IMG/VR virus record: IMGVR_UViG_3300036770_004723
Coordinates: 1 to 64,000 of that record
Length of the DNA stretch: 64,000 nucleotides
Direction: 5' to 3' (one strand)
Below are positions 31,388 through 57,595 of this stretch, piece by piece (position 1 is the first letter of the stretch; each line of letters starts with the position of its first letter). A program made the position numbers and the translations under genes. The notes beneath the pieces are model-generated. The model was given only the letters and a program-made list of their open reading frames with translations. It ran no database searches and was not told where the DNA came from.

Positions 31388-34300
31388 ATGGCTGGAACAC
31401 CTTTTGTATCAGTTTATGAAAATTTAAATGCAGATCCAGCAGACACAGTTGCGAATTATACTTGGAAATACGATCACGAGTATATTGTTTATGTAGTAGA
31501 AAGACATAAACGTACTGAATTAGGTATGAGTTATACACTAACACTAAGATCTGCTATAGGTTCATCTGATAGAGGATTTATCGCCAAACACATCGACTGC
31601 TATGTTATATTTGATCAGCAGGATATGAAAATAAAAACACAGACTAGACAAGGTGATTGGTGTCCGATAGTAAAAATACTAGAAAGACCTGTAACATTTG
31701 GTGTAACTGATCATACTTCTGAGAATTGGGAAGAGTGGTGGACAGGTACGGCAGCTCAAGTATCAAAACCTTGGGAAGATGACTACGAATATTTTGTACT
31801 TTCAAGTCAAGGTGCTGCCCCTGGAAATATAGGTTGGTCAAGTTTTGTTACTTCTTTACATTTTTTTATACCTGAAGAATTTGAACAAGTCCCTATAAAT
31901 GGTGAGTGCTTTATGCGCCCCACTGTGGATGGAGGTATTAAGTTTTGGCGTCCACATTGGGGTGGAAATAAAAGTAGTAGATACGTAGCTACTTGGGGCA
32001 ACGTATCTATTATTTCACATATATATAGAAGAAAAATTCGTTTTGATACAGCACCATCAAAACAATTTAATAGTTGGTTTAAAAAGCAAATATTCGGTTT
32101 TCCTTATGGCGTATATGCAGGTAATAAATGGCGCGATGCGAAGCCATGTAATTGGGTAGAAGATAAAGAAGTTATTATGATGACCTTGGACTGTTCTGGT
32201 CCTGACGAATTAGCTTCCTCTTATTTTTTTACCGATAGTGCTATGTTTACTTTGCCTAGTAGTGTAATGAATTATAGTGAAGGGGGCATGGTATGCGAGT
32301 CGGGAGTTAGTCATTTTACCATGTTAAATACTCCCAATTTTGCAAGACACGGTGTTAAAACTGTGCATACCTACGGAGATGATGGTGCAACTGTTTTTGT
32401 AATGTATGAAAAACTGGATGTTTTAGCTGACGATCCTGTTATTATTGTTCCTCCTGAACCAGATCCTAAGCCGCCGTCATGTTCAGACTGTGTAAGGGCA
32501 GGATCTATTTGGGAACAAACTGCAAATATTGAAGTAAAATTTTTAAAGCCTGTTGATTGGCAATTACGTAATTACCGTTACGTGTGGTCCGGTGATATAG
32601 GTAATGGAAATGTTGAGTTACTTGGAACCGAAGACAAAGGGCGTATTGCCAAAATTCGTTTTGCAAAACAAATGGCAGTTGAAGACTCTTCAACCTTTTT
32701 ACCTGTTAATATTGTAGTAGAAGTATTTGACGAAGATTATAGTGCAATAGGTATATCTGATAAAGATAGCGCAGTAATATCTTTTGAATTGCCTTGTGTA
32801 ATATTAGCGAACGAACCTAATATATCTATACAGGATTTAAGTATTATAGAAGGTGATGTCGATAATAAAATACTGTTAAAAATTTCTGCCAGTGAGCCAG
32901 CTGAAGGTGGAGATATAACAGTTGATTGGACTACAGTTGAAGACACTGCAACGAATAATGTAGATTATTACCAAGCTAGCGGGACCGCTACTATAGTCGA
33001 AGGATCAAGTGAAGCTATTGTGGAAATAATGTTGATAGGTGATGATATTTTAGAAAGCAATGAAACTTTTATTGTACGTATTTCAAATGCAAGTCGTGGA
33101 AATATTGTTAAAGATACAGGTATCATAACTATACTAGATGATGATGCAAGTCCTTGCGGTGTAGATACGCCAGCAGGCGGTGCAGGTGTAACAGAAACAA
33201 CACATTTCTTAGGCTCTAATCCTGGACGTGTTATAGTTACATTTGAAATGTACGGTGTACAAGATAAAATGGAAATTTTTTATGAAGGAAATTTAGTTGC
33301 GGCCACAAGCCCAGGTCCTGATGGTAAAAATGTACCAGGAGGTAATATTTTAAATCCTGGATTCGTTAGCGATCAAGGTAATCTTTCTTTTGACTATTTT
33401 GGTCCACCTAGAGCAACTTCATTTATGATCAGAATGACAGGTCCTGATGGAACTGAATGGAATTATAAATTTAATTGCCCTGTTCCTTTCGATGGTGGAT
33501 GGGATGGAAAATTAGATGCAGTTCCTACATTAATATTCGATCCTTTAGGTAATGGTACTGAGTTTGACGCAGGTTTGTTTATTATGCCTGATGGATCTAT
33601 CCAAGCAACTTCTGCTTCAGGACCTTTAGGTTATTGGAGTGGGGCAATTGCAAATAGCTCTAATTCCGAAGTAAAATTTGAAGTTATTTCTGGTACGGCA
33701 AGTGTACATAATAATGCTCCGGATTTTTCACCTTTAGCATCTTCCAGACAAATATGGTTACGTCTTCCATTAAATTCTCCTGTTACTGAAGTAACTATTA
33801 GAGTTTATTTGCGTGAAGCCGGTTCTACAACAGCAATAGTAACTAAAGACGTGGTGTTAAAAGTAGGATCTGGAGGAACTGGAGGTGGAGGCAATGGCTG
33901 TTTTATTTACGGCACATTGATCGACATGGCTGACGGTACTAAAAAGAAAATTGAAGATATTGTTGTAGGTGATAAATTAAAAACTTTATTAATACCTGAT
34001 ATGCCGGACGCAAGTGCAGAAGATCCTACCAGCTATTTCGATTGGTCTGAAATAGCTATCGCACCTACTTATGCGGAATGTTATGTAAAAGATGTGGATC
34101 ATAATAGCTTTAGTTATTATTACAAAATATTTGCAGAAAATATGTTTGAACCTTTATGTATAACAGTAGAACATCCGGTATTAGTTAAATTTCAAGAACA
34201 AGGTATGGAATGGCATTGGGATACACCAGCTAGATTAAGAATAGGTGATTATCTTTATAATAATAAGATGGAAGCAGTTAAAATTTTGACGATAGAAATA

Positions 34301-34420
34301 GTGGTTGAAAAAATAAATACCGCTAATTTAAACGTAGAAAATTTAGATACATATTTTGCTAACGGTATATTTGTACATAATAGTGAAAATACAGAAACAC
34401 CTAAAGAACCTATAGGGTAA
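31388..34420 (+). CDS. Multidomain virion/fibre protein with Calx-beta and C-terminal Hint domain
   Basis: ISIQDLSIIEGD...VDWTTVEDTATNNVDYYQASGTATI...ILDDD (Calx-beta); GGTGGGGNG-CFIYGT...VHN-S. Confidence 0.85.
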   Translation: MAGTPFVSVYENLNADPADTVANYTWKYDHEYIVYVVERHKRTELGMSYTLTLRSAIGSSDRGFIAKHIDCYVIFDQQDMKIKTQTRQGDWCPIVKILERPVTFGVTDHTSENWEEWWTGTAAQVSKPWEDDYEYFVLSSQGAAPGNIGWSSFVTSLHFFIPEEFEQVPINGECFMRPTVDGGIKFWRPHWGGNKSSRYVATWGNVSIISHIYRRKIRFDTAPSKQFNSWFKKQIFGFPYGVYAGNKWRDAKPCNWVEDKEVIMMTLDCSGPDELASSYFFTDSAMFTLPSSVMNYSEGGMVCESGVSHFTMLNTPNFARHGVKTVHTYGDDGATVFVMYEKLDVLADDPVIIVPPEPDPKPPSCSDCVRAGSIWEQTANIEVKFLKPVDWQLRNYRYVWSGDIGNGNVELLGTEDKGRIAKIRFAKQMAVEDSSTFLPVNIVVEVFDEDYSAIGISDKDSAVISFELPCVILANEPNISIQDLSIIEGDVDNKILLKISASEPAEGGDITVDWTTVEDTATNNVDYYQASGTATIVEGSSEAIVEIMLIGDDILESNETFIVRISNASRGNIVKDTGIITILDDDASPCGVDTPAGGAGVTETTHFLGSNPGRVIVTFEMYGVQDKMEIFYEGNLVAATSPGPDGKNVPGGNILNPGFVSDQGNLSFDYFGPPRATSFMIRMTGPDGTEWNYKFNCPVPFDGGWDGKLDAVPTLIFDPLGNGTEFDAGLFIMPDGSIQATSASGPLGYWSGAIANSSNSEVKFEVISGTASVHNNAPDFSPLASSRQIWLRLPLNSPVTEVTIRVYLREAGSTTAIVTKDVVLKVGSGGTGGGGNGCFIYGTLIDMADGTKKKIEDIVVGDKLKTLLIPDMPDASAEDPTSYFDWSEIAIAPTYAECYVKDVDHNSFSYYYKIFAENMFEPLCITVEHPVLVKFQEQGMEWHWDTPARLRIGDYLYNNKMEAVKILTIEIVVEKINTANLNVENLDTYFANGIFVHNSENTETPKEPIG
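33899..34381 (+). other. Hint (intein-like) domain, 161 aa, canonical splicing residues
   Basis: Cys1 (aa 838), block B TVEH, terminal His-Asn, +1 Ser; no homing endonuclease. Confidence 0.85.
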
Positions 34421-34651: not shown

Positions 34652-35428
34652 ATGAATCTTACACAAATACCAATGGCTTTGGTAAAGCCTCAAACAGGCG
34701 CTATAGCAGGCCAAACAGTTAGTGTCGTAAGTCCAGAAAAATTAGGTACTGAGGATCCGCAATCAGGGTTAGTTCCTGCTGTAATACAAGGAACTTATGA
34801 TAGTGAAAGCGGAACAGTAACATTAGTAAATGCTGACGATAGTATTGTTACCATAACTGGATTTCCAACTGAGAGATCATTACCGCAAGGCCACAGAGGA
34901 CCTGAAGGTAAAGTTGGCTTACGTGGTTTACCTGGTAGGTCAGGACGAGATGGTAAACCAGGAATACAAGGTTGTCCAGGAGTTAAAGGAGATCGTGGAT
35001 TACGTGGGCCGATAGGGCCAGAAGGGCCAAGAGGCCCACAAGGAGAAATAGGTAAAACAGGTGAGAAAGGTGATAAGGGAGATAAAGGTGACGCAGGTGC
35101 TGACGGCGTAGAACCTGAATATTTAAAAACTAGTCGTGGTGTTTCTATCACAATAAAAAGAAGTGGCGGAAATATACAAAGCGGCTATTATGAAAATATT
35201 TTACAGGATAGAACAATTACTGTGCTTTTCCCGCGTAACCTTGTTAACCAAGTAGCATCAATAATTCTTTTCTTTAAAAATCCTAGCAGCTACCAAGCAC
35301 AAAATTACGAAATAGGGAACTATTTTTATGATGACCTTGAAATTGGTGGCTTTACAATAACTTTAAAAGGTACTGTACCTACACCGCTAGAAGCTTGGCA
35401 ATTCTGGTGGCTGGTAATGGGCGATTAA
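34652..35428 (+). CDS. Collagen-like fibre protein with beta C-terminal domain
   Basis: LTQIPMALV / YD...G.VTL...ITGFPT N-domain, Gly-X-Y run, IQSG...ITVLFP fibre-tip-like domain. Confidence 0.8.
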   Translation: MNLTQIPMALVKPQTGAIAGQTVSVVSPEKLGTEDPQSGLVPAVIQGTYDSESGTVTLVNADDSIVTITGFPTERSLPQGHRGPEGKVGLRGLPGRSGRDGKPGIQGCPGVKGDRGLRGPIGPEGPRGPQGEIGKTGEKGDKGDKGDAGADGVEPEYLKTSRGVSITIKRSGGNIQSGYYENILQDRTITVLFPRNLVNQVASIILFFKNPSSYQAQNYEIGNYFYDDLEIGGFTITLKGTVPTPLEAWQFWWLVMGD

Positions 35429-35968: not shown

Positions 35969-36907
35969 ATGGATCAGCTATTAGTAAGTTTAATTACGGA
36001 GTGTTTAGCTAAATCAACTACATTAGGCATAACAGGATCTAATACAGTTGTATTATCTGTAGGTGCATCAGATAATGAAAGTGTTAATATTTATGTGAGT
36101 TACATAGAACCGAATTTAGCGGAGCTTCCGTTAAATTTTATGTGGTTGGTGGCAGATCAAAATAGCGGTAATTACAGAAAACTATTAAAGCGTGTTTCAC
36201 GTATAAGTACACCGCCATTTAATAATACTTATATTGAGTTAAGTACACGGCAAGAAGTTTTAACCAATTACATGCAATATGATCAAGCTAGCTTGATCCG
36301 AAGCGCTTTAATTAACCACGTTGTTAGTACAGGTAACAGTCACAATGCAACACCTACACAATTAAGTTCTGTTAATGTAGGTGGAGATCAAATGGTAGGG
36401 CAGTTGTTAGCCCGAGCCAATTGGAGAACTGTTCCATTAGTGCCTACAGAATTTATACCAAATCAAAGATTGATCGATGCACAGAATGCGCAAACAAATG
36501 GATTCTACACGATCATAATGCAGTTAAATTCTAGAGTAAGTAAAGTAGAGGAAGAACTAAGGAATTTAAAACTAGGTAGGATAAAAGAATTAGAGGATAG
36601 AGTTACATTAATTGAAGAAACTGGTAATGGATCTATTGATATAGGTATTGTACCAAGAACTTATGTTCACATACAAGAAACGGAACAAAGTATTTGGACA
36701 ATTAATCATAGACTAGGTAATACAGACCTAATAGTTCAATACTGGGTAGCTCAATTAGATGGTGATGGAAAAACAGTTTACGAAGTTGCTGTAGCTGAAT
36801 CTATAACTTTGTTAGATGGTGAATTTTTAGTTGTAGAACATAACATGCCGGTAAAAGGTAAGGTTGTAATTCTTGAGGCAGGTTTAGATCCTGCACCTAT
36901 TAATTGA
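35969..36907 (+). CDS. Virion fibre-associated protein
   Basis: Coiled coil, then YVHIQ...WTINHRLG module shared with 39455, 41239 and 41859. Confidence 0.65.
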   Translation: MDQLLVSLITECLAKSTTLGITGSNTVVLSVGASDNESVNIYVSYIEPNLAELPLNFMWLVADQNSGNYRKLLKRVSRISTPPFNNTYIELSTRQEVLTNYMQYDQASLIRSALINHVVSTGNSHNATPTQLSSVNVGGDQMVGQLLARANWRTVPLVPTEFIPNQRLIDAQNAQTNGFYTIIMQLNSRVSKVEEELRNLKLGRIKELEDRVTLIEETGNGSIDIGIVPRTYVHIQETEQSIWTINHRLGNTDLIVQYWVAQLDGDGKTVYEVAVAESITLLDGEFLVVEHNMPVKGKVVILEAGLDPAPIN

Positions 36908-36933: not shown

Positions 36934-37884
36934 ATGAAAGTTTTTACATTAGTTTTTATTTTACTTTTGTCTTTTAATTGTTGGCCTCACAGTTTAAAGA
37001 TAGAAAACAAGCCAACAATATATCTGGTAACACAGAATCCGTTAGGTGCTTATTATGGAGATAGAGTAGCAAATCATTTAGCAAAGTCATTTAAAGATCA
37101 CCAAATAAATACATACTACCTGAACATGGATATAGGCACGTCAGATTCTAATATTAATTATTTGCTGAATTTGATAGTAGATGACATAAATAAAGTAAAT
37201 CCCAGCTTTGTTTTTGTTCATAATTCAGGACTGACGGTAGCCCTGAAAAAAGAATTAGGTTCGAAGTATATAATAAGTGATTTCTCAGTAACTAATACTA
37301 AGGATGACGTGTTACTAGAAGATCCTATAACAAAACTTATTTCTATATTAGATGCTTTTGACTACACAGTAGGTAAATATTATATAATAACGGATAAGAC
37401 AAATCAAAGTAAAAGAAATTCTTCTTTGTTCAAAAGATTGCTAAAAGCTAACAAAGTTAAAGACGTAGACATAGAGATACTTGAGGTCTCTGATGCAAAG
37501 AATTTAACTAAAGAGTTAAATAGACTTAACGGTTTACCTAAAGGTGTTATATTTAATGCGCTGTACTTGCTTCGTGATAATGAATTAAATAAAATAAAAT
37601 ACGCGGTAGAGCTGAAAAATCAACTAACAGAATTCAATAAAAAACACATTGATGTCAGTCCTTACTTAAGTGTTGGAGGCAATGAAGCACTTATATTTCT
37701 AATTGACTTAAATCAAGCCAACAGCTTTTTTAAAAAGTATATCAATAAGTCTTCAGATTCTGAAATAGAAAGGGCAAACTTTAAGGTATTGTTGAATGTT
37801 GATAGATTCGATAAGCTGGGATTAAAGGAGCATTATATGAAAAATATAAATGTTATTGATGGAGTAATTTATGACAAACATTAA
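36934..37884 (+). CDS. Secreted periplasmic-binding-protein-like (type I fold, ABC_sub_bind-like) protein
   Basis: Signal peptide MKVFTLVFILLLSF; IYLVTQ...YYLNMD...INKVNPSFVFV...YYIITDKT...VLLNVDRFDKLGL pattern. Confidence 0.55.
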   Translation: MKVFTLVFILLLSFNCWPHSLKIENKPTIYLVTQNPLGAYYGDRVANHLAKSFKDHQINTYYLNMDIGTSDSNINYLLNLIVDDINKVNPSFVFVHNSGLTVALKKELGSKYIISDFSVTNTKDDVLLEDPITKLISILDAFDYTVGKYYIITDKTNQSKRNSSLFKRLLKANKVKDVDIEILEVSDAKNLTKELNRLNGLPKGVIFNALYLLRDNELNKIKYAVELKNQLTEFNKKHIDVSPYLSVGGNEALIFLIDLNQANSFFKKYINKSSDSEIERANFKVLLNVDRFDKLGLKEHYMKNINVIDGVIYDKH

Positions 37885-38158
37885 TCCTAATCATATAAAG
37901 AGTTTGCTTATTATATTTGTAGCAATAGCGCTCTTTATGTTTTTAGGAGAGTTTTTTCTTAATGCAAAGGATGATAAAGAAAAAGCAATAAAAAACGAAA
38001 TAGTACTGTGCGCAAGCGCAATATGTATTAATAAGAAAATTGGACATCAATGTCTTGAAATAGATCCTGCCATGACACGGATAGTAATCGCAGAAGATCC
38101 TAATTCTAAGTCTCAACGTATTATCATAGAGACAGGAAACAGTTGTGCAAACAACTAA
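37871..38158 (+). CDS. Single-TM protein with small four-Cys domain
   Basis: SLLIIFVAIALFMFLGEFFL TM, then C-ASAI-C...C...C. Confidence 0.65.
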   Translation: MTNINPNHIKSLLIIFVAIALFMFLGEFFLNAKDDKEKAIKNEIVLCASAICINKKIGHQCLEIDPAMTRIVIAEDPNSKSQRIIIETGNSCANN

Positions 38159-38167
38159 GGGCTTAAA

Positions 38168-38698
38168 ATGGGTGATGTGTTTAAAGTGATATTAGATCAG
38201 TCACCAAGCACCGCAATTCTACTGCTGATTATTCTAGGTATGTCGTGGTTCATTTATAGTCACGCATTGCCTGCTATTCAAAATTTAAAAAATCATGAAA
38301 TAGAAAAAGAAGCGTGGATTAAAGAGCGTAATGATCTTAATACTATAATTGCCAACCACGTAGTTAACGATAAAACAGAACAGTTAATACAAGAATTAAT
38401 AAAAACTTGTCAGGCCACACATCAAAAAGTTTCTGAACTATCTTTACAAGTAGATGATGATTTTGAAAAGCTTGCAAAAGAAGTAGAGAACTTAATGCGT
38501 TTGTATCGTGAACTGATAGCATCAAGTGATAGTAATATGCTAAGAAGAACAGAAGGAGTGGATGCGAACCTTCAGTTAATAACGCAGCAAGTAAGTATTG
38601 TAAGTCACAAGTTATCAGGAATAACAGGCTTACTGGTTGGGAACCAACATAGAGCTGCACTCGAACTCATGGGTAGTGAGTTTAAGGATCTCAAGTGA
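38168..38698 (+). CDS. Single-TM coiled-coil protein
   Basis: AILLLIILGMSWFIY TM followed by heptad-rich helices. Confidence 0.65.
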   Translation: MGDVFKVILDQSPSTAILLLIILGMSWFIYSHALPAIQNLKNHEIEKEAWIKERNDLNTIIANHVVNDKTEQLIQELIKTCQATHQKVSELSLQVDDDFEKLAKEVENLMRLYRELIASSDSNMLRRTEGVDANLQLITQQVSIVSHKLSGITGLLVGNQHRAALELMGSEFKDLK

Positions 38699-39426
38699 TG
38701 TCTCTTGAATTTAAATCGATCATTTGCGAAACCAATTCAAGATCTTGGTTGTGCAAGAACCAACTAATAAGAATGTTTCTGAATTCGAAAAAATACAAAT
38801 TCAGTAATACAAGTTTAACAGTGCTTGAATCTGAAATAGATCTTACAACAGATCTAATTCGTTTAACGGAAAAAGAATTTTTAGATAATTTAGATATTAT
38901 CGAGGCCAGAAGAAACATACTGGAAAAATCCAGATTGTTGATGGCTACTCACATTGATTCTTTAAAGTCGAACACAAAATTAGAGCCTAGTCTATTGTTA
39001 GTGTATATGGCGGTCAAACAAAAATACATCAAAGTTTTGTTAGACAGATTAGCGGTATTCCTTCAACAAGAAAAAGAATTAAGCTATCCAGAAATAAGCA
39101 ATTTTTTATGTAGCGTATTAAACCACTTGGCCTTGATCTTAAGTGAGATAGACTATTTGGTATTCTGGAAGTCAGTGGACAATTTTGATCCTTTTGTTAC
39201 AATAGACTATTTAGATCTCGTGTTTACACGGGATATAGATAGAAACTTTATAACAGAAAGATTAAAATTTTATAAGGAAAATAATCTGTTACGTGATCCA
39301 TTTTTGTGTGTGAAGTTATATGTAAGTGCAGAAAGATTGGATAGTGATACAACATTATCTGATAGCTACGAACTTGCATTAGTAGAAATAAAAAAGTGTG
39401 GTTTTAAAATAATCTCCATTCTGTAG
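38695..39426 (+). CDS. Hypothetical alpha-helical soluble protein
   Basis: 243 aa, Leu-rich, overlaps upstream stop. Confidence 0.7.
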   Translation: MMSLEFKSIICETNSRSWLCKNQLIRMFLNSKKYKFSNTSLTVLESEIDLTTDLIRLTEKEFLDNLDIIEARRNILEKSRLLMATHIDSLKSNTKLEPSLLLVYMAVKQKYIKVLLDRLAVFLQQEKELSYPEISNFLCSVLNHLALILSEIDYLVFWKSVDNFDPFVTIDYLDLVFTRDIDRNFITERLKFYKENNLLRDPFLCVKLYVSAERLDSDTTLSDSYELALVEIKKCGFKIISIL

Positions 39427-39454: not shown

Positions 39455-41155
39455 ATGTCTAAGCAATACGGTAATCTGGTATTCATGGGTCAAGGCCAAG
39501 TAAAAAACTTCACACCTGAAAAACTGGCGGCAGATCCAGTAGGTGTTGGTTTATGGGAAGGTCGCGTATGGACCAACGAAACTGAAAAATGTATTAAGTT
39601 CTTTTTAGATGGTGAAGTTAAGCAAGTTGCTGAAGGCGGTTCACTGGAAGATTATTTACGTCGTGACGGCACACTGAACATGTTGGCAGACCTGACTTTA
39701 AGTTCAGATGATCAAAGTGCTGCCGCAGACACTACTGCTGTAAGTAAGAAACATGTTGAAACTCGCTTATCTACCAAACAAAATACTGTAACTGGCGCAG
39801 CAACTTCAATCGTTACAGCAGATTTAACTGCTGAACGTGTTGCTGTTTCTGATGCAAGCGGTAAAGTTGCAGTTTCTGCTGTTACTACTACTGAATTGGG
39901 CTATGTTGGCGGTGTTACTTCAGGCATTCAAGCACAGATCGACAGCAAACAAGATGACCTTGGTTATGTACCAGTAAATCGCGCTGGTGATAGCATGACC
40001 GGCCAGCTGGCAATGAACAACGAACGTATCATTGGTGTAGGCGCTCCAGTTAACGCAAACGATGCAATTCGTAAGATCGATCTTGATACTGCAATCGCAA
40101 ACTTAAACTGGCAAGATGACGTATTAGCAATTCAAGTTGATAATACTTTAGTTCCAGAATTAGTTGAAGGTTCTCGTTACATTGTCACTGACGTTGCAAA
40201 TTTAAATGCGGGTTTCGGTGTTATTGCTGATGTAGCAAATAATGATATCGTTGAATATGTCGGCGGTGCTTTCGTTGTTGCATACGATATTAGTGCTGCT
40301 GGTGCGCAAGCTGCTGGTACTTTTACTACCAATATTGCTGACGGTTCATTCTATCGTTACAATGGTTCATGGTCACGTTTCGAAGGTGTTGACAGTATTG
40401 TTGCTGGTACGGGTTTAGTGCGTTCAGGTAACGTTTTCAACGTTAACATGGGTGCCGGTATTTCTGAATTACCTTCAGATGAAATCGGTATTGATGTACG
40501 TGCTAACGGTGGTTTATTTCTTACTGAAGATGGTTCAGTTGCCTCAACTGGTGCAAGCGCACAATTAGCTGTACTGTTACAGTCTACTGGCGGTCTGGAT
40601 ATCGGTGTTGACGGTGGCGTACAAGTTAAATCACAAGGTATCGTCGCAGCAATGTTAGGTGCTGTTGCTGCAAACGGTTTAACTGGTGGTAACGGTGTAG
40701 CTGTTAGTGTTTTAGCTGCTGACGCTTCTTTAACTGTTGATGTGTCTGGCGTTAAATTAAATGAAACACACACTGACGGCATTTATGCCCGTCAAGATGG
40801 TGCAGATTTTACTGGCGCTGTTACTGTACAGGCTCCAACTGCTAATGCAAATCCGGCTACAAAACTGTATGTTGATACAAAAGAAACTGCGTTACAGGAT
40901 GCTATCACAGCAGTAAATGCTCGCGTAACTGACGGTCATTTTGTTTATGATGGTACTGCTGCCGCTGCGTCAACACACACTGTTGCACACGGTATCGGTC
41001 AGAAATATGTTTCTGTAACTGTAGTAGATGAATTCGACAACGTTGTTGGCGTTGATGAAATTACTTATGTTGATGCAAACACTTTAACAGTTTCTGTATT
41101 GCCTGCAAGTAAAATCCGTGTAATCTGTGTTGGTTCGGCTCCAGTAGTAGCATAA
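39455..41155 (+). CDS. Probable high-copy virion fibre protein
   Basis: 566 aa, Ala/Gly/Val-rich; DAIRKIDLD and PATKLYVDT fibre motifs, AGTGLVRSGNVFNV repeats; strong codon bias; GAGGT RBS; followed by terminator. Confidence 0.75.
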   Translation: MSKQYGNLVFMGQGQVKNFTPEKLAADPVGVGLWEGRVWTNETEKCIKFFLDGEVKQVAEGGSLEDYLRRDGTLNMLADLTLSSDDQSAAADTTAVSKKHVETRLSTKQNTVTGAATSIVTADLTAERVAVSDASGKVAVSAVTTTELGYVGGVTSGIQAQIDSKQDDLGYVPVNRAGDSMTGQLAMNNERIIGVGAPVNANDAIRKIDLDTAIANLNWQDDVLAIQVDNTLVPELVEGSRYIVTDVANLNAGFGVIADVANNDIVEYVGGAFVVAYDISAAGAQAAGTFTTNIADGSFYRYNGSWSRFEGVDSIVAGTGLVRSGNVFNVNMGAGISELPSDEIGIDVRANGGLFLTEDGSVASTGASAQLAVLLQSTGGLDIGVDGGVQVKSQGIVAAMLGAVAANGLTGGNGVAVSVLAADASLTVDVSGVKLNETHTDGIYARQDGADFTGAVTVQAPTANANPATKLYVDTKETALQDAITAVNARVTDGHFVYDGTAAAASTHTVAHGIGQKYVSVTVVDEFDNVVGVDEITYVDANTLTVSVLPASKIRVICVGSAPVVA

Positions 41156-41181: not shown

Positions 41182-41207
41182 ATGGGGCGTTAATTCGCCC
41201 CATTTTT
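41182..41207 (+). terminator. Intrinsic terminator
   Basis: ATGGGGCG-TTAATT-CGCCCCAT followed by TTTT. Confidence 0.85.
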
Positions 41208-55994: not shown

Positions 55995-56327
55995 ATGCAA
56001 GATCAAGTGTCAGCAGCGAATTTATTGGGACCACTGTTAAAATATAGTTGGGACTACTTTGTTATATCCTATTTATTTACAATGTTAGGTATAGCCATTC
56101 ACTATGTAAAAAAATGCGTACAGGAAAAATTAGATTTTGTACTTTACTGGACAGCAAACAAACAAAGTAGTATTCTGGTAGTTTTAACCGCAACAGCTAG
56201 TTACTTTACTACTTTGTTCGTGGATCCTAATCCTAATCTTTTAACTTTCTTGGCCATAAGTTACATGGCAGATAGTATGCTGAATAAAGATGGAGGACCT
56301 AAAAATGACAGAAGAAGCTCAGACTAA
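55995..56327 (+). CDS. Candidate holin
   Basis: 110 aa, two to three hydrophobic segments, charged C-terminus, first gene of the spanin cluster. Confidence 0.45.
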   Translation: MQDQVSAANLLGPLLKYSWDYFVISYLFTMLGIAIHYVKKCVQEKLDFVLYWTANKQSSILVVLTATASYFTTLFVDPNPNLLTFLAISYMADSMLNKDGGPKNDRRSSD

Positions 56328-56646
56328 ATTGCCCTGGTATAAAAAATATTTTAATATACTGGTCTTTGTTTTGCTGGCTATTGCTGCTGGGATAGGTGCG
56401 GCGTTCGCTAATAGACGTGTGTTACCTCAAGAAAAACAGGACGCATTAGATAAGAGTCTGATTGATGAAAAGATTGATATATCTAACCAAATGGATGCGG
56501 ATTTGGATGCTAAAATTATAAAGGCTTTAGATACTTCAGCTAAAGCAAGTGAAACTATAGAAGAAATTAAACTAGCGGATAGTTTAAAAACAGATGACGA
56601 AAAAATCGAAGACCTTAATGATTTTATGGCAGACAGAAGAAGATGA
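56305..56646 (+). CDS. Candidate i-spanin (Rz-like)
   Basis: ATG at 56305 after GGAGG; basic N-terminus, one TM, acidic helical periplasmic tail. Confidence 0.5.
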   Translation: MTEEAQTKLPWYKKYFNILVFVLLAIAAGIGAAFANRRVLPQEKQDALDKSLIDEKIDISNQMDADLDAKIIKALDTSAKASETIEEIKLADSLKTDDEKIEDLNDFMADRRR

Positions 56647-57143
56647 CAGAACAATTTAAAGTAAGTACATCCAAAGTAAATACAGGATTTTGCCCACCTC
56701 CAATATTTTTAAATAAATTGCGGTTAGAATCTCTTGAAGGTGGATACAAATTTATACTGATCAATGATTTCACTATGGAATTTTCTTGGGACCTAGAAAA
56801 AAATATTGTGGTGCGAAAAGGAGATATTCAGGTAAGGAAGTACGTCACTGTTTCACTTACTGCTTGCTCTGGATTTGAAACGGATCTAATAAGCAGTCCT
56901 CGATTTTTATGGTCGCTGTTTCCTCCAGCAGGATCAGGTTTAATGTCTAGTGTAATACACGATTTACTTTATCGTAATGACGTACCTTCACCAGACGGCA
57001 AATATTTCGATCAAAAGGCAGCCGACAAGATCTTCAGAGCAGGTTTAGATATAGAGGAAAATGTTAGTGTCTGTAAGAAAGTTGCAATGTATACAGCTCT
57101 TAAATTGGCGGGGATTAGAGCATGGAAAGAAAATCGAAAATAA
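56643..57143 (+). CDS. DUF1353-family protein
   Basis: GFETDLISSPRFLWSLFPP...VIHDLLY...AADKIF...MYTALKLAG signature. Confidence 0.85.
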   Translation: MTEQFKVSTSKVNTGFCPPPIFLNKLRLESLEGGYKFILINDFTMEFSWDLEKNIVVRKGDIQVRKYVTVSLTACSGFETDLISSPRFLWSLFPPAGSGLMSSVIHDLLYRNDVPSPDGKYFDQKAADKIFRAGLDIEENVSVCKKVAMYTALKLAGIRAWKENRK

Positions 57144-57595
57144 TATTACTTTCTTTGTTTCTTTTAGGGTGTTCGGGCACACCTACAGAAAGAAAAGAAG
57201 TGATACTGAAAGAAATAAAAGAGTTTGAGTACACAGAAATAAAAAGTGTTGAAGTACCTAAGCCTTTTGTTAATGATGTTAAAAAATTCATTGACAGCAA
57301 CGGGCAATCATGGGCACTGGTACATGTAGATGATTTGTACTTGATTAAGCAGGCTTATGTAAGTGCAGAACAAAATGCTGAACTTGTAAAACAGCTTAAT
57401 CAAATTAACTATCTTACGGCACAAAGGGCTAATCTTATCAGGGAGTTAGTTGTCTTAGAGGCATATAGAGCGGAAAAGATGAAGATTAGTCTGGAAGACG
57501 AAAGAGCAGATTTTAGAGAACAGCAAATAAGAGCTAACATAGAAAACTTAACCTTAAAGATCATTACCATAATGTCATTAGGTTTAGCACTATAA
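57122..57595 (+). CDS. Lipoprotein, candidate o-spanin (Rz1-like)
   Basis: IILLSLFLLG-C lipobox followed by SGTP and a coiled-coil body. Confidence 0.55.
   Translation: MERKSKIILLSLFLLGCSGTPTERKEVILKEIKEFEYTEIKSVEVPKPFVNDVKKFIDSNGQSWALVHVDDLYLIKQAYVSAEQNAELVKQLNQINYLTAQRANLIRELVVLEAYRAEKMKISLEDERADFREQQIRANIENLTLKIITIMSLGLAL

What the first reader, a model, noticed from the sequence alone, without database searches (positions are those of the whole stretch)
36934..39426. Possible phage transmembrane sensing cassette: periplasmic binding protein + two membrane proteins + cytoplasmic protein
Seen: four coupled genes inside the late operon: a signal-peptide protein with a type I periplasmic-binding (ABC_sub_bind-like) pattern, a TM protein with a small four-Cys domain, a TM coiled-coil protein, and a soluble helical protein. 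No ABC ATPase or permease is present. Established: T4 lysis inhibition uses a single-TM holin (T), a periplasmic antiholin (RI) and a cytoplasmic antiholin (RIII). Inference: a late-expressed system that senses a periplasmic ligand and tunes lysis timing or superinfection response. No sequence homology to T/RI/RIII is claimed.
Basis: inference. Interest (0 to 1): 0.75.

Follow-up and report, generated by a model that had tools for sequence, protein, structure and literature searches.

The report
Conserved jumbo-phage envelope-spanning four-gene module
Four tightly coupled genes in the tail-gene block of a 287-kb phage encode a secreted solute-binding-type protein, two single-pass membrane proteins and a cytoplasmic protein with an unknown fold; the set is kept in every close relative, looks like a receptor split into pieces, and its job is still unknown.

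Summary
Four real, translationally coupled genes lie at 36934-39426. They occur in the same order in all 37 related loci examined (NCTB, PaBG, Dickeya and Erwinia jumbo phages, uncultured relatives), always just upstream of a virion tail-protein gene.

- P1 has a signal peptide and a confident two-lobed type I periplasmic-binding fold. Its nearest solved structures are the four PF04392 (ABC_sub_bind) entries (Z 16-17).
- P2 is an N-in membrane protein with a small periplasmic domain carrying four invariant cysteines.
- P3 is a membrane-anchored coiled coil. Its charge distribution suggests N-out with a cytoplasmic stalk.
- P4 is a soluble five-helix bundle plus a small alpha/beta domain. It matches no known fold, so its public label "ABC transporter" is spurious.

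The phage genome has no ABC ATPase or permease. Read in series, P1, P3 and P4 resemble a PBP-type transmembrane sensor split into separate proteins.

The proposed link to lysis timing has no direct support. No protein resembles T4 T, RI or RIII. A separate lysis-like cluster, with a u-spanin-like lipoprotein, lies at 55995-57595. The complex prediction gave no answer.

My leading reading is a sensing or signalling module (confidence about 0.35). Superinfection exclusion, a membrane tether for assembly, or a direct lysis role remain open. The module is undescribed in the literature I searched.

The parts
36934..37884 (+). P1: secreted periplasmic protein with a type I periplasmic-binding-protein fold, a distant PF04392 (ABC_sub_bind) relative. 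Signal peptide is about residues 1-20.
   Evidence: ORF. SD GGAG upstream of the ATG. Signal peptides across the family. AF2 pLDDT 80. Foldseek against PDB and AFDB. VIA-align Z 16.3-16.9 to 6hnj, 6hni, 3lkv and 3lft. Profile search finds 185 representative clusters, 4 of 74 of which pass PF04392. Residues invariant in 23 relatives: Y150, D215, N235, H238.
37871..38158 (+). P2: bitopic membrane protein, N-in/C-out, with a periplasmic domain of about 55 aa carrying four invariant cysteines (probably two disulfides).
   Evidence: TM at about residues 12-30. Invariant C47, C52, C61, C92 and D76, near-invariant P66. Flank charges: mean net (C minus N) = -3.65 over 23 sequences. No family or fold match.
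38168..38698 (+). P3: bitopic membrane protein with a short acidic or neutral N-tail, a TM segment followed by an invariant Pro, a long helical coiled-coil stalk, and a C-terminal tail that is recurrent but not invariant (DLRxLR in the Erwinia/Dickeya clade, FKDLK in the window, absent from the PaBG clade). Predicted N-out/C-in.
   Evidence: TM at about residues 16-34. Alignment A6 shows invariant P35 and the C-terminal motif. Positive residues: mean (C flank minus N flank) = +2.1. Only weak look-alikes, such as long-helix proteins and Mu releasin-type clusters, all below 0.9.
38695..39426 (+). P4: soluble cytoplasmic protein with five long helices plus a small alpha/beta domain. Phage-specific orphan fold with a conserved acidic cluster. 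Its real start is probably ATG 38698.
   Evidence: No TM. AF2 pLDDT 90.6, pTM 0.87. No PDB match (Foldseek E>0.1; VIA Z<=8.5, in the noise range for helical bundles). The only matches are phage orthologues and one uncharacterised AFDB cluster. Invariant F36, E59, E151, D153, R189, Y193; near-invariant D171, D174, K207. Start context TGATG.
35969..36907 (+). Upstream neighbour: fibre-like protein with a central coiled coil and a C-terminal domain shared with the downstream tail proteins. Public records label it 'HNH endonuclease'.
   Evidence: phrog_24148, plus phrog_21918 on the C-terminal domain. Same position in NCTB, PaBG, JA11, Yoloswag and SNUABM_32.
39455..41155 (+). Downstream neighbour: virion tail protein. 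Its PaBG orthologue, gp257, was detected in purified virions.
   Evidence: phrog_16122, 2e-121. tblastn gives 42-49% identity to PaBG and NCTB. PaBG Table 1 band 6 (PMC7412058).
41182..41203 (+). Intrinsic-terminator-like hairpin that closes the transcription unit holding the cassette and the tail-protein gene.
   Evidence: 8-bp stem with 6 GC pairs, followed by a T-run. It is the only strong terminator-like site in 31-43 kb.

Best explanation
The four genes encode one module that spans the inner membrane and is made late, together with tail proteins.

- P1 is exported to the periplasm. It is a PF04392-type solute-binding protein with no transporter of its own.
- P2 is anchored N-in and displays a small disulfide-stabilised domain in the periplasm.
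- P3 is anchored N-out. It has a short conserved periplasmic tail and a long cytoplasmic coiled-coil stalk.
- P4 is a cytoplasmic protein with an orphan fold and a conserved acidic cluster.

Read in series, P1, P3 and P4 reproduce the domain order of bacterial sensor kinases and diguanylate cyclases that use a PF04392-like periplasmic domain: PBP, then a TM segment, then a signalling helix, then an output domain. My best reading is therefore a PBP-dependent transmembrane receptor split into separate polypeptides. P1, with P2, would report a periplasmic ligand or state across the membrane through P3 to the effector P4.

Shown: gene structure, conservation, export signal, PBP fold, invariant cysteines, absence of ABC partners.
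Inferred: membrane topologies, complex formation, signalling.
Unknown: the ligand and the output. Lysis timing is one candidate output among several.
For: - Tight coupling and strict co-occurrence of the four genes, in the same order, in 37 of 37 related loci.
- P1 has a signal peptide throughout the family.
- P1 has a PBP fold, closest to the PF04392 structures. Its best AlphaFold DB matches are the N-terminal periplasmic sensor domains of histidine kinases and diguanylate cyclases, with TM-scores up to 0.72.
- The P1 family grades into PF04392 by sequence.
- The phage genome has no ABC ATPase or permease.
- P2 has a positive N-flank and four invariant Cys in its C-terminal domain, which implies a periplasmic, oxidised domain.
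- P3's positive residues are concentrated after the TM segment, and its TM/juxtamembrane region and C-terminus are conserved.
- P4 is confidently folded, soluble and conserved, with invariant E59, E151, D153, R189 and Y193.
- The core trio recurs in more distant uncultured phage contigs. L095 and L097 have the P1-like gene, a P2 with the same 4-Cys pattern and a P3. L086, L087 and L090 have positional analogues.
- All four proteins diverge about twice as fast as the adjacent tail protein: 14-32% against 37-51% identity. This is typical of proteins that face the host.
Against: - No interaction among the four proteins has been shown. The complex prediction scored 0.07 and gave no verdict.
- P3's topology rests only on the positive-inside rule.
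- P4 has no recognisable signalling or output domain.
- P2 interrupts the P1/P3 series, and its role is unexplained.
- One relative (L097) lacks P4, so P4 is not indispensable.
- Only N235 and N288 of P1 stay at least 90% conserved across 74 distant family members, so a single conserved ligand pocket across the wider family is doubtful.
- Strict synteny inside the tail-gene block would fit a morphogenetic role as well.
Confidence: 0.35

Rival explanations
1. Superinfection exclusion or envelope protection. P1 and P2 in the periplasm, with P3 in the membrane, would block a later phage's DNA entry or mask an envelope component used for adsorption or entry. This would resemble T4 Imm/Sp, T5 Llp, Cor or HK97 gp15, whose genes also often sit beside tail or receptor-binding genes.
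For: - The proteins are periplasmic or membrane-located.
- The cassette sits among fibre genes here. In distant contigs it again lies next to tail-fibre-like genes: L087, L097, and less clearly L096, whose only marker is a YomF_N hit.
- The proteins evolve fast compared with the neighbouring tail protein.
- The gene locations of Llp, Cor and gp15 are from established knowledge and were not tested here.
Against: - Known exclusion genes are usually single, sporadic and expressed early. This is a four-gene set kept in every member of a clade.
- It appears to be co-transcribed with late tail genes.
- Exclusion gives no role to a conserved cytoplasmic P4 or to the P3 stalk.
- No sequence or fold similarity to Imm, Sp, Llp or Cor was found.
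Confidence: 0.2
2. Morphogenetic tether. P3 and P4 would anchor an assembling baseplate, tail or fibre complex to the inner membrane, with P1 and P2 stabilising the anchor from the periplasmic side. On this reading the cassette is an assembly factor rather than a sensor.
For: - Invariant position inside the tail/fibre gene block and a shared transcription unit with a virion tail protein.
- P3 resembles a membrane-anchored stalk of variable length, from 103 to 239 aa, like a spacer.
- Core conservation is more typical of morphogenetic genes than of accessory genes.
Against: - An assembly factor has no evident need for a secreted PBP-fold protein or a disulfide-bonded periplasmic domain.
- More distant phages (L038, L033) carry a homologue of the tail protein without the cassette.
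- In L090 the trio lies away from tail genes, beside PhoH and a late-sigma-like gene.
- The cassette proteins evolve about twice as fast as the tail protein.
Confidence: 0.15
3. Part of the lysis machinery itself. For example, P2 could be a class III-like single-TM holin regulated by periplasmic P1 and by cytoplasmic P3/P4. This is the T4 T/RI/RIII logic, or the phiKZ gp142/gp143 logic. Alternatively, P3 could be an i-spanin-like or releasin-like factor.
For: - P2 has the N-in/C-out single-TM topology of class III holins, and T4 T also carries a periplasmic disulfide (holin classes as described in PMC12894885).
- A cytoplasmic regulator of a single-TM holin now has a precedent in a jumbo phage (phiKZ gp143; PMC12894885).
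- In L087 the P1/P3-like genes lie within about 1.5 kb of a lipoprotein gene and a GTA_holin_3TM gene.
- P3's weak feature look-alikes include Mu releasin-type and holin clusters, with scores of 0.85.
- PaBG lyses slowly, taking more than 3 h (PMC7412058).
Against: - No protein matches any holin, antiholin or spanin family.
- The P2 TM segment is poorly conserved, as expected for a plain anchor.
- No lipobox ORF lies next to P3. The only convincing lipoprotein in the window is at 57122-57595.
- That lipoprotein belongs to a separate lysis-like cluster at 55995-57595, alongside a multi-TM small protein, and has the u-spanin architecture.
- P3's charge pattern argues against a periplasmic coiled coil.
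- Look-alike scores below 0.9 are leads only.
Confidence: 0.12
4. Auxiliary metabolic gene. P1 would be a solute-binding protein that docks onto a host ABC importer to boost uptake of a nutrient during late infection, as cyanophage PstS does for phosphate. The solved PF04392 relatives bind aromatic amino acids.
For: - P1 is closest to the PF04392 solute-binding proteins 3lft and 6hni/6hnj; 3lft was solved with bound L-Trp (its PDB title), and I recall, untested here, that CD0873 binds tyrosine.
- The phage has no permease or ATPase of its own.
Against: - This does not explain the three strictly co-inherited partner genes.
- Auxiliary metabolic genes are usually sporadic rather than core.
- P1 is too divergent to score against PF04392 directly.
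- P1 shares only 15-26% identity among relatives that infect different hosts, which is hard to reconcile with docking onto a conserved host permease.
Confidence: 0.06

Closest known systems
PF04392 (ABC_sub_bind) solute-binding proteins, e.g. S. pneumoniae 3lft, C. difficile CD0873 (6hni/6hnj), V. cholerae 3lkv
   Same: P1 has the same two-lobed type I PBP fold. These four entries are its best solved matches (Z 16.3-16.9, about 255 aligned residues). P1 has an export signal. Distant members of the P1 family pass the PF04392 model.
   Different: P1 itself does not score against PF04392, and identity to the solved structures is 10-12%. The genome encodes no cognate permease or ATPase. P1 is instead coupled to three unrelated small proteins inside a phage tail-gene block.
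Bacterial sensor histidine kinases and diguanylate cyclases with an N-terminal PF04392-like periplasmic sensor domain
   Same: These sensor domains are P1's best AlphaFold DB cluster matches (TM-score by query 0.6-0.72). The order PBP, TM segment, helical stalk, cytoplasmic domain matches P1, then P3, then P4.
   Different: Here the parts are separate polypeptides, with an extra bitopic protein (P2) between them. There is no HisKA, HATPase, GGDEF, PAS or HAMP domain, and P4 has an orphan fold.
T4 lysis-inhibition system (holin T, periplasmic antiholin RI, cytoplasmic antiholin RIII)
   Same: Both combine a periplasmic soluble protein, a single-pass N-in/C-out membrane protein whose periplasmic domain carries cysteines, and a cytoplasmic protein. 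In T4 the holin gene also follows the tail-fibre genes (T4 facts from established knowledge).
   Different: No sequence or family similarity was found. P1 is a 316-aa PBP, whereas RI is a 97-aa helical protein. The cassette has an additional membrane-anchored coiled-coil protein. A separate lysis-like cluster exists in the window. No phenotype is known.
phiKZ lysis cassette: class III holin gp142 with its cytoplasmic regulator gp143 (PMC12894885)
   Same: It is a jumbo-phage example of a single-TM membrane protein paired with a soluble cytoplasmic regulator encoded next to it.
   Different: The phiKZ genes sit with the endolysin and the i-/o-spanin genes, and their function was shown by complementation. 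Here there is no endolysin or spanin in the cassette, no PBP partner in phiKZ, and no detected homology.
RseB-RseA-sigmaE type trans-membrane signalling (a periplasmic protein binding a bitopic protein that holds a cytoplasmic partner)
   Same: The general layout is the same: a periplasmic soluble protein, a bitopic membrane protein and a cytoplasmic protein encoded in one operon (established knowledge, resemblance only).
   Different: No sequence or fold relationship was found or tested beyond the Pfam scan. P4 is not sigma-like.

Membership tests
Type I periplasmic binding protein / PF04392 ABC_sub_bind (P1) | N-terminal export signal (signal peptide or lipoprotein signal) | tested here: met
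   A hydrophobic N-terminus with AXA-like cleavage sites is present in the window, NCTB and PaBG. It is also present in the Erwinia and Dickeya relatives once upstream starts are used.
Type I periplasmic binding protein / PF04392 ABC_sub_bind (P1) | Two Rossmann-like alpha/beta lobes joined by a hinge | tested here: met
   AF2 model pLDDT 80, pTM 0.74, with alternating strand/helix elements in two lobes. Foldseek PDB E 6e-7 to 4e-5 against RBP, 3lft, LacI-family and BmpD. VIA-align Z 16.3-16.9 to the PF04392 structures.
Type I periplasmic binding protein / PF04392 ABC_sub_bind (P1) | Score above the Pfam gathering threshold for PF04392 | tested here: not met
   The window protein gives no PF04392 hit, even at E<=1. 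The link is transitive only: the family profile finds P0073 at 7.5e-16, P0073 scores 28.7 bits against a cut-off of 25.9, and 4 of 74 distant members match with a best E of 7.5e-18.
Type I periplasmic binding protein / PF04392 ABC_sub_bind (P1) | Cognate ABC permease and ATPase encoded alongside | tested here: not met
   PF00005 gives only a sub-threshold 25-residue P-loop match at 129 kb. PF02653 gives none. The whole 286,584-base genome was searched.
Type I periplasmic binding protein / PF04392 ABC_sub_bind (P1) | Binds a small ligand in the inter-lobe cleft | not testable with these tools
   Invariant polar residues are present (Y150, D215, N235, H238; near-invariant E217, Y112).
ABC transporter (the public label on P4 orthologues; phrog_19088) | ABC ATPase domain (Walker A/B, signature motif) or a multi-pass permease | tested here: not met
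   P4 has no Pfam hit, no TM segment and no GxxxxGK[ST] motif in the sequence. Its fold is a five-helix bundle plus a small alpha/beta domain with no match to ABC proteins.
T4 lysis-inhibition proteins T / RI / RIII | Sequence membership of the holin T family or of the RI or RIII families | tested here: not met
   None of the four proteins has a Pfam, PHROG-lysis or NCBIfam match.
T4 lysis-inhibition proteins T / RI / RIII | Delay of lysis on superinfection, dependent on these genes | not testable with these tools
   This needs infection experiments. The only related report is slow lysis of PaBG (PMC7412058).
Two-component spanin (i-spanin plus o-spanin) | i-spanin: N-in TM segment with a periplasmic coiled coil | tested here: inconclusive
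   P3 has a TM segment plus a coiled coil. However, positive residues cluster after the TM segment (mean +2.1 over 23 sequences), which predicts N-out/C-in. This is a prediction only.
Two-component spanin (i-spanin plus o-spanin) | An o-spanin lipoprotein gene embedded in, overlapping or directly following the i-spanin gene | tested here: not met
   A lipobox scan of the whole genome finds no candidate near 38168-38698. The only convincing one in the window is 57122-57595. P4, which follows P3, has no signal sequence.
PBP-domain sensor kinases / diguanylate cyclases | A recognised cytoplasmic transmitter domain (HisKA/HATPase, GGDEF/EAL, PAS/HAMP) | tested here: not met
   P3 and P4 have no such Pfam domain, and P4's fold has no match. 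Only the periplasmic sensor part resembles these proteins.
Virion structural proteins | Detected in purified particles | tested here: inconclusive
   PaBG's published virion table lists 14 abundant bands. It includes gp257 (the downstream neighbour) but not gp253-256, the cassette orthologues. Low-abundance proteins were not tabulated. A cleavable signal peptide argues against P1 being packaged.

The most novel reading that the evidence does not exclude
A whole clade of jumbo phages carries its own receptor for the periplasmic environment. It would be a PBP-type sensor split into four proteins, made late in infection. It would read a small molecule or a superinfection-derived signal in the periplasm and pass the signal through a membrane-anchored stalk to an effector with a new fold, setting the timing of lysis or another late decision. 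This would be the first phage-encoded PBP-based transmembrane sensor. It would also be mechanistically unrelated to T4 lysis inhibition while doing a similar job.
Probability: 0.2. Interest if true: 0.8.

Novelty: new variant of a known kind. Interest (0 to 1): 0.55.

Why it matters
Very few phage systems are known that gather information from outside the cytoplasm: T4 lysis inhibition, arbitrium, and some use of host quorum signals.

If this module is a sensor, it would show that large lytic phages can carry a dedicated periplasmic receptor built from a bacterial solute-binding fold. It would also give P4, a confidently folded but unclassifiable protein, a function as a new kind of output domain.

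Even if the sensor reading is wrong, the result has practical value.

- It defines a four-gene core module of the PaBG/NCTB/Yoloswag/Alexandra/Salmond phage group.
- It corrects misleading public annotations: "ABC transporter", "HNH endonuclease", and P1 starts that cut off the signal peptide.
- It points to culturable systems in which a knockout is feasible (PaBG on P. aeruginosa PAO1, and the Erwinia and Dickeya phages).

Tried and rejected
1. Direct family assignment. Pfam, PHROGs and NCBIfam scans of the four proteins gave nothing usable. PHROG hits were to unknown-function families and to the mislabelled phrog_19088.
2. Megablast of the region against phage records gave no match. A single-protein locus search for P1 in IMG/VR found nothing. 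An alignment-based locus search with P4 failed for lack of conserved stretches. The tail-protein alignment worked instead.
3. A complex prediction of all four chains scored 0.00 and 0.07 and returned 'no answer'. It is not used as evidence either way.
4. P4 was searched against PDB (Foldseek and VIA wide), AFDB clusters, the ESM Atlas and BFVD. Only phage orthologues and one uncharacterised cluster matched.
5. Atlas look-alikes for P2 and P3 scored 0.78-0.88, below the trust level.
6. A profile search of P1 against PDB sequences gave only a chance neuroglobin hit.
7. I tested whether the roughly 100-aa proteins that follow P1-like genes in code-4 contigs are P2 homologues. hhalign gave E 0.04 and probability 1.3%, so homology is not shown and they count as positional analogues only.
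8. I looked for the endolysin to locate the lysis genes. PaBG's GH108/LemA/TPM genes have no homologue in this genome. PF00959, PF01464, PF05838 and PF01510 gave no hits. The endolysin remains unidentified.
9. tblastn of distant P1-like proteins against cultured phages gave no match.
10. Literature searches found no study of these genes. The Dickeya phage paper has no proteomics.
11. Only DNA metagenomes hold the sequence, so expression could not be examined and read laying was not used.
12. I rejected the idea that P1 is a lipoprotein. A PROSITE-style lipobox (LGAC) occurs only in the Erwinia and Dickeya clade and is absent from the window, NCTB and PaBG.


Full report
**What the window is.** The 64-kb window is the first part of a 286,584-base virus record with 100% estimated completeness. 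It comes from a subsurface metagenome. Its structural proteins place it with Phage NCTB and Pseudomonas phage PaBG, and more distantly with the Erwinia and Dickeya jumbo myophages Yoloswag, Alexandra-like and JA11/JA29. This is the 'Lupandier group' of PMC7412058.

| Protein | Coordinates | Length |
|---|---|---|
| P1 | 36934-37884 | 316 aa |
| P2 | 37871-38158 | 95 aa |
| P3 | 38168-38698 | 176 aa |
| P4 | 38695-39426 | 243 aa |

- P1 and P2 overlap by 14 nt, and P2 and P3 are 9 nt apart.
- P4 most likely starts at ATG 38698, which shares its A with the P3 stop (TGATG).
- Each start has a Shine-Dalgarno-like motif.
- The flanking genes are tail or fibre genes. Upstream are a collagen-like fibre protein and a fibre-like protein that public records call 'HNH endonuclease'. 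Downstream is the orthologue of PaBG gp257, which was found in purified virions.
- The only strong terminator-like hairpin between 31 and 43 kb follows that tail gene, at 41182-41203. The cassette is therefore probably co-transcribed with it. No RNA data exist to confirm this.

**The genes are real and form a unit.** NCTB, PaBG, JA11, Yoloswag and pEa_SNUABM_32 all have four genes of matching sizes between the same two neighbours.

Profiles built from these six sets recovered all four genes, in the same order, in 37 of 37 loci that carry a close full-length homologue of the tail protein, with E-values from 1e-10 to 1e-118. Some of these loci are the same phage seen in two collections.

Two more distant phages carry a tail-protein homologue but lack the cassette. 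The module is therefore a core feature of one clade rather than an obligate companion of that tail protein.

All four proteins are only 14-32% identical between genera, against 37-51% for the tail protein.

**P1.**
- Every family member has an N-terminal signal peptide. The RefSeq starts for the Erwinia and Dickeya orthologues are too far downstream and cut it off.
- An AlphaFold2 model built on a 23-sequence alignment has pLDDT 80 and pTM 0.74 and shows two alpha/beta lobes.
- Foldseek finds ribose-binding protein, 3lft, LacI-family cores and BmpD.
- In AlphaFold DB clusters the best matches are the N-terminal periplasmic sensor domains of histidine kinases and diguanylate cyclases, with TM-scores up to 0.72.
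- VIA-align ranks the four PF04392 structures 6hnj, 6hni, 3lkv and 3lft first, at Z 16.3-16.9. The LacI/ribose-binding group scores 14 or less.
- P1 itself does not score against PF04392 by sequence.
- A family profile finds 185 representative clusters in 1.84 billion proteins, and 4 of 74 distant members pass PF04392 with a best E of 7.5e-18.

P1 belongs to a divergent phage branch of that superfamily. The genome has no ABC ATPase or permease.

**P2.** P2 has one TM segment with a positively charged N-flank (mean net charge difference -3.65). Its C-terminal domain of about 55 residues carries four invariant cysteines, an invariant Asp and a nearly invariant Pro. That pattern implies an N-in/C-out protein whose small domain is oxidised in the periplasm. 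No family or fold match was found.

**P3.**
- It has a short N-tail with almost no positive residues, followed by a TM segment and an invariant proline.
- A helical stalk follows, whose length varies from 103 to 239 residues among relatives.
- Its extreme C-terminus carries a recurrent motif: DLRxLR in the Erwinia/Dickeya clade and FKDLK in the window. The PaBG clade lacks it.
- Positive residues are concentrated after the TM segment (mean +2.1). The positive-inside rule therefore predicts N-out/C-in with a cytoplasmic stalk. This is an inference and has not been shown.

**P4.**
- It has no TM segment.
- Its model is very confident (pLDDT 90.6, pTM 0.87): five long helices followed by a small alpha/beta domain.
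- Nothing in the PDB resembles it beyond generic helical bundles.
- The only matches are phage orthologues and one uncharacterised cluster.
- All sequence relatives are unnamed proteins, many of them on contigs of roughly 200-320 kb.
- The 'ABC transporter' label on its orthologues and on phrog_19088 has no basis.
- It has an invariant acidic and basic set (E59, E151, D153, R189, Y193; near-invariant D171, D174, K207), which suggests an active site or a fixed binding surface.

**Wider distribution.** Distant P1-like genes in uncultured contigs are again followed by a roughly 90-120-aa N-terminal-TM protein and a TM-plus-helix protein.

| Locus | What follows the P1-like gene |
|---|---|
| L093 | Full set of four genes |
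| L095 | P2 with the same four-Cys pattern, then P3 |
| L097 | P2 with the same four-Cys pattern, a 103-aa P3, then directly the tail protein, with no P4 |
| L086, L090 | Cysteine-free analogues of P2; both contigs use genetic code 4 |
| L087 | Lies between fibre-like genes and just upstream of a lipoprotein gene and a GTA_holin_3TM gene |

Homology of the cysteine-free analogues in L086 and L090 to P2 could not be demonstrated. The conserved core is therefore P1-P2-P3, and P4 is usual but not universal.

**How it most likely works.** The anatomy gives a periplasmic PBP, a periplasmic disulfide domain on a membrane anchor, a membrane-anchored cytoplasmic stalk and a cytoplasmic protein. Taken in series, P1, P3 and P4 match the domain order of the bacterial sensors whose periplasmic domains are P1's best structural matches.

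I therefore favour a PBP-dependent transmembrane receptor split into separate proteins, with unknown ligand and unknown output (confidence about 0.35).

- There is no similarity to T4 T, RI or RIII.
- A separate lysis-like cluster lies at 55995-57595. It holds a multi-TM 110-aa protein, a 118-aa TM protein, a DUF1353 protein and a lipoprotein with a lipobox and a C-terminal TM segment, which is the unimolecular-spanin architecture.
- The complex prediction returned no verdict.

The recent phiKZ work shows that a jumbo phage can pair a single-TM holin with a cytoplasmic regulator (PMC12894885). That keeps a lysis role conceivable. Superinfection exclusion, a membrane tether for tail assembly, a direct lysis role and a nutrient-uptake role are listed as rivals with their tests.

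**Novelty.** I found no publication on these genes, and public records call them hypothetical or mislabel them. The parts are of known kinds (a PBP, bitopic membrane proteins), but the combination, its phage setting and the P4 fold are new. I rate it a new variant of a known kind, of moderate interest until a phenotype is found.

Noticed in passing
window 55995-57595 (+): A probable lysis cluster lies at the end of the + strand late block. It holds a 110-aa protein with 2-3 hydrophobic segments (holin-like), a 118-aa N-terminal-TM protein, a DUF1353 protein (56643-57143), and a 157-aa lipoprotein (57122-57595). The lipoprotein has the lipobox LLGC and a C-terminal TM segment, which is the unimolecular-spanin architecture, and a weak match to an Rz-like spanin PHROG (4.7e-4).
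   Followed up: partly
whole genome G000 (286,584 bases): No endolysin was found with PF00959, PF01464, PF05838 or PF01510. PaBG's GH108 endolysin, LemA-like and TPM-domain genes have no homologue here. The endolysin of this phage remains unidentified.
   Followed up: partly
L003 4433-5179, L004 3646-4383, L005 3557-4378 (RefSeq records of Dickeya JA11, Erwinia Yoloswag, pEa_SNUABM_32): The annotated starts of the P1 orthologues are too far downstream and remove the signal peptide. The longer ORFs begin with a charged n-region and a hydrophobic core (for example ...RQRIAAYILGACLWCSAIDVHA/D). In this clade only, the sequence LGAC would also pass a loose lipobox rule.
   Followed up: partly
window 35969-36907 and orthologues; P4 orthologues: Two public product names look wrong. 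'HNH endonuclease' (phrog_24148) labels a fibre-like protein with a coiled coil and a C-terminal domain shared with the neighbouring tail proteins. 'ABC transporter' (phrog_19088) labels the P4 family.
   Followed up: yes
window 31388-34420 (+): A 1010-aa tail/fibre-region protein ends in a Gly-rich linker followed by a Cys-initiated segment (…GGGGNGCFIYGTLIDMADG… …FVHNSENT). This resembles a Hint/intein-type autoprocessing domain. The NCTB gene one further upstream (NCTB's syntenic counterpart is labelled 'aggregation factor core protein MAFp3') is annotated 'large intein domain protein'.
   Followed up: no
window 34652-35428 (+): A 258-aa protein with a long collagen-like Gly-X-Y repeat region. 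It matches many tail-fibre PHROGs.
   Followed up: no
L086 and L090 (Logan contigs): These distant phage contigs with P1-like genes read through TGA. The P1-like ORFs are intact only under genetic code 4, so these phages appear to use TGA as a sense codon.
   Followed up: partly
L087 8129-8416 and 8820-9221: In a 168-kb uncultured phage contig, the P1-like and P3-like genes are followed within about 1.5 kb by a 95-aa lipoprotein (lipobox LSSC) and a GTA_holin_3TM protein. This is the only place where the module sits beside recognisable lysis genes.
   Followed up: partly
window 38695-39426; IMG/VR gene call: The collection's own gene call for P4 is 217 aa (P0176) and starts at an internal Met. 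The alignment shows that the N-terminal helix upstream of that Met is conserved, so the longer ORF, starting at 38695 or 38698, is the better call.
   Followed up: yes
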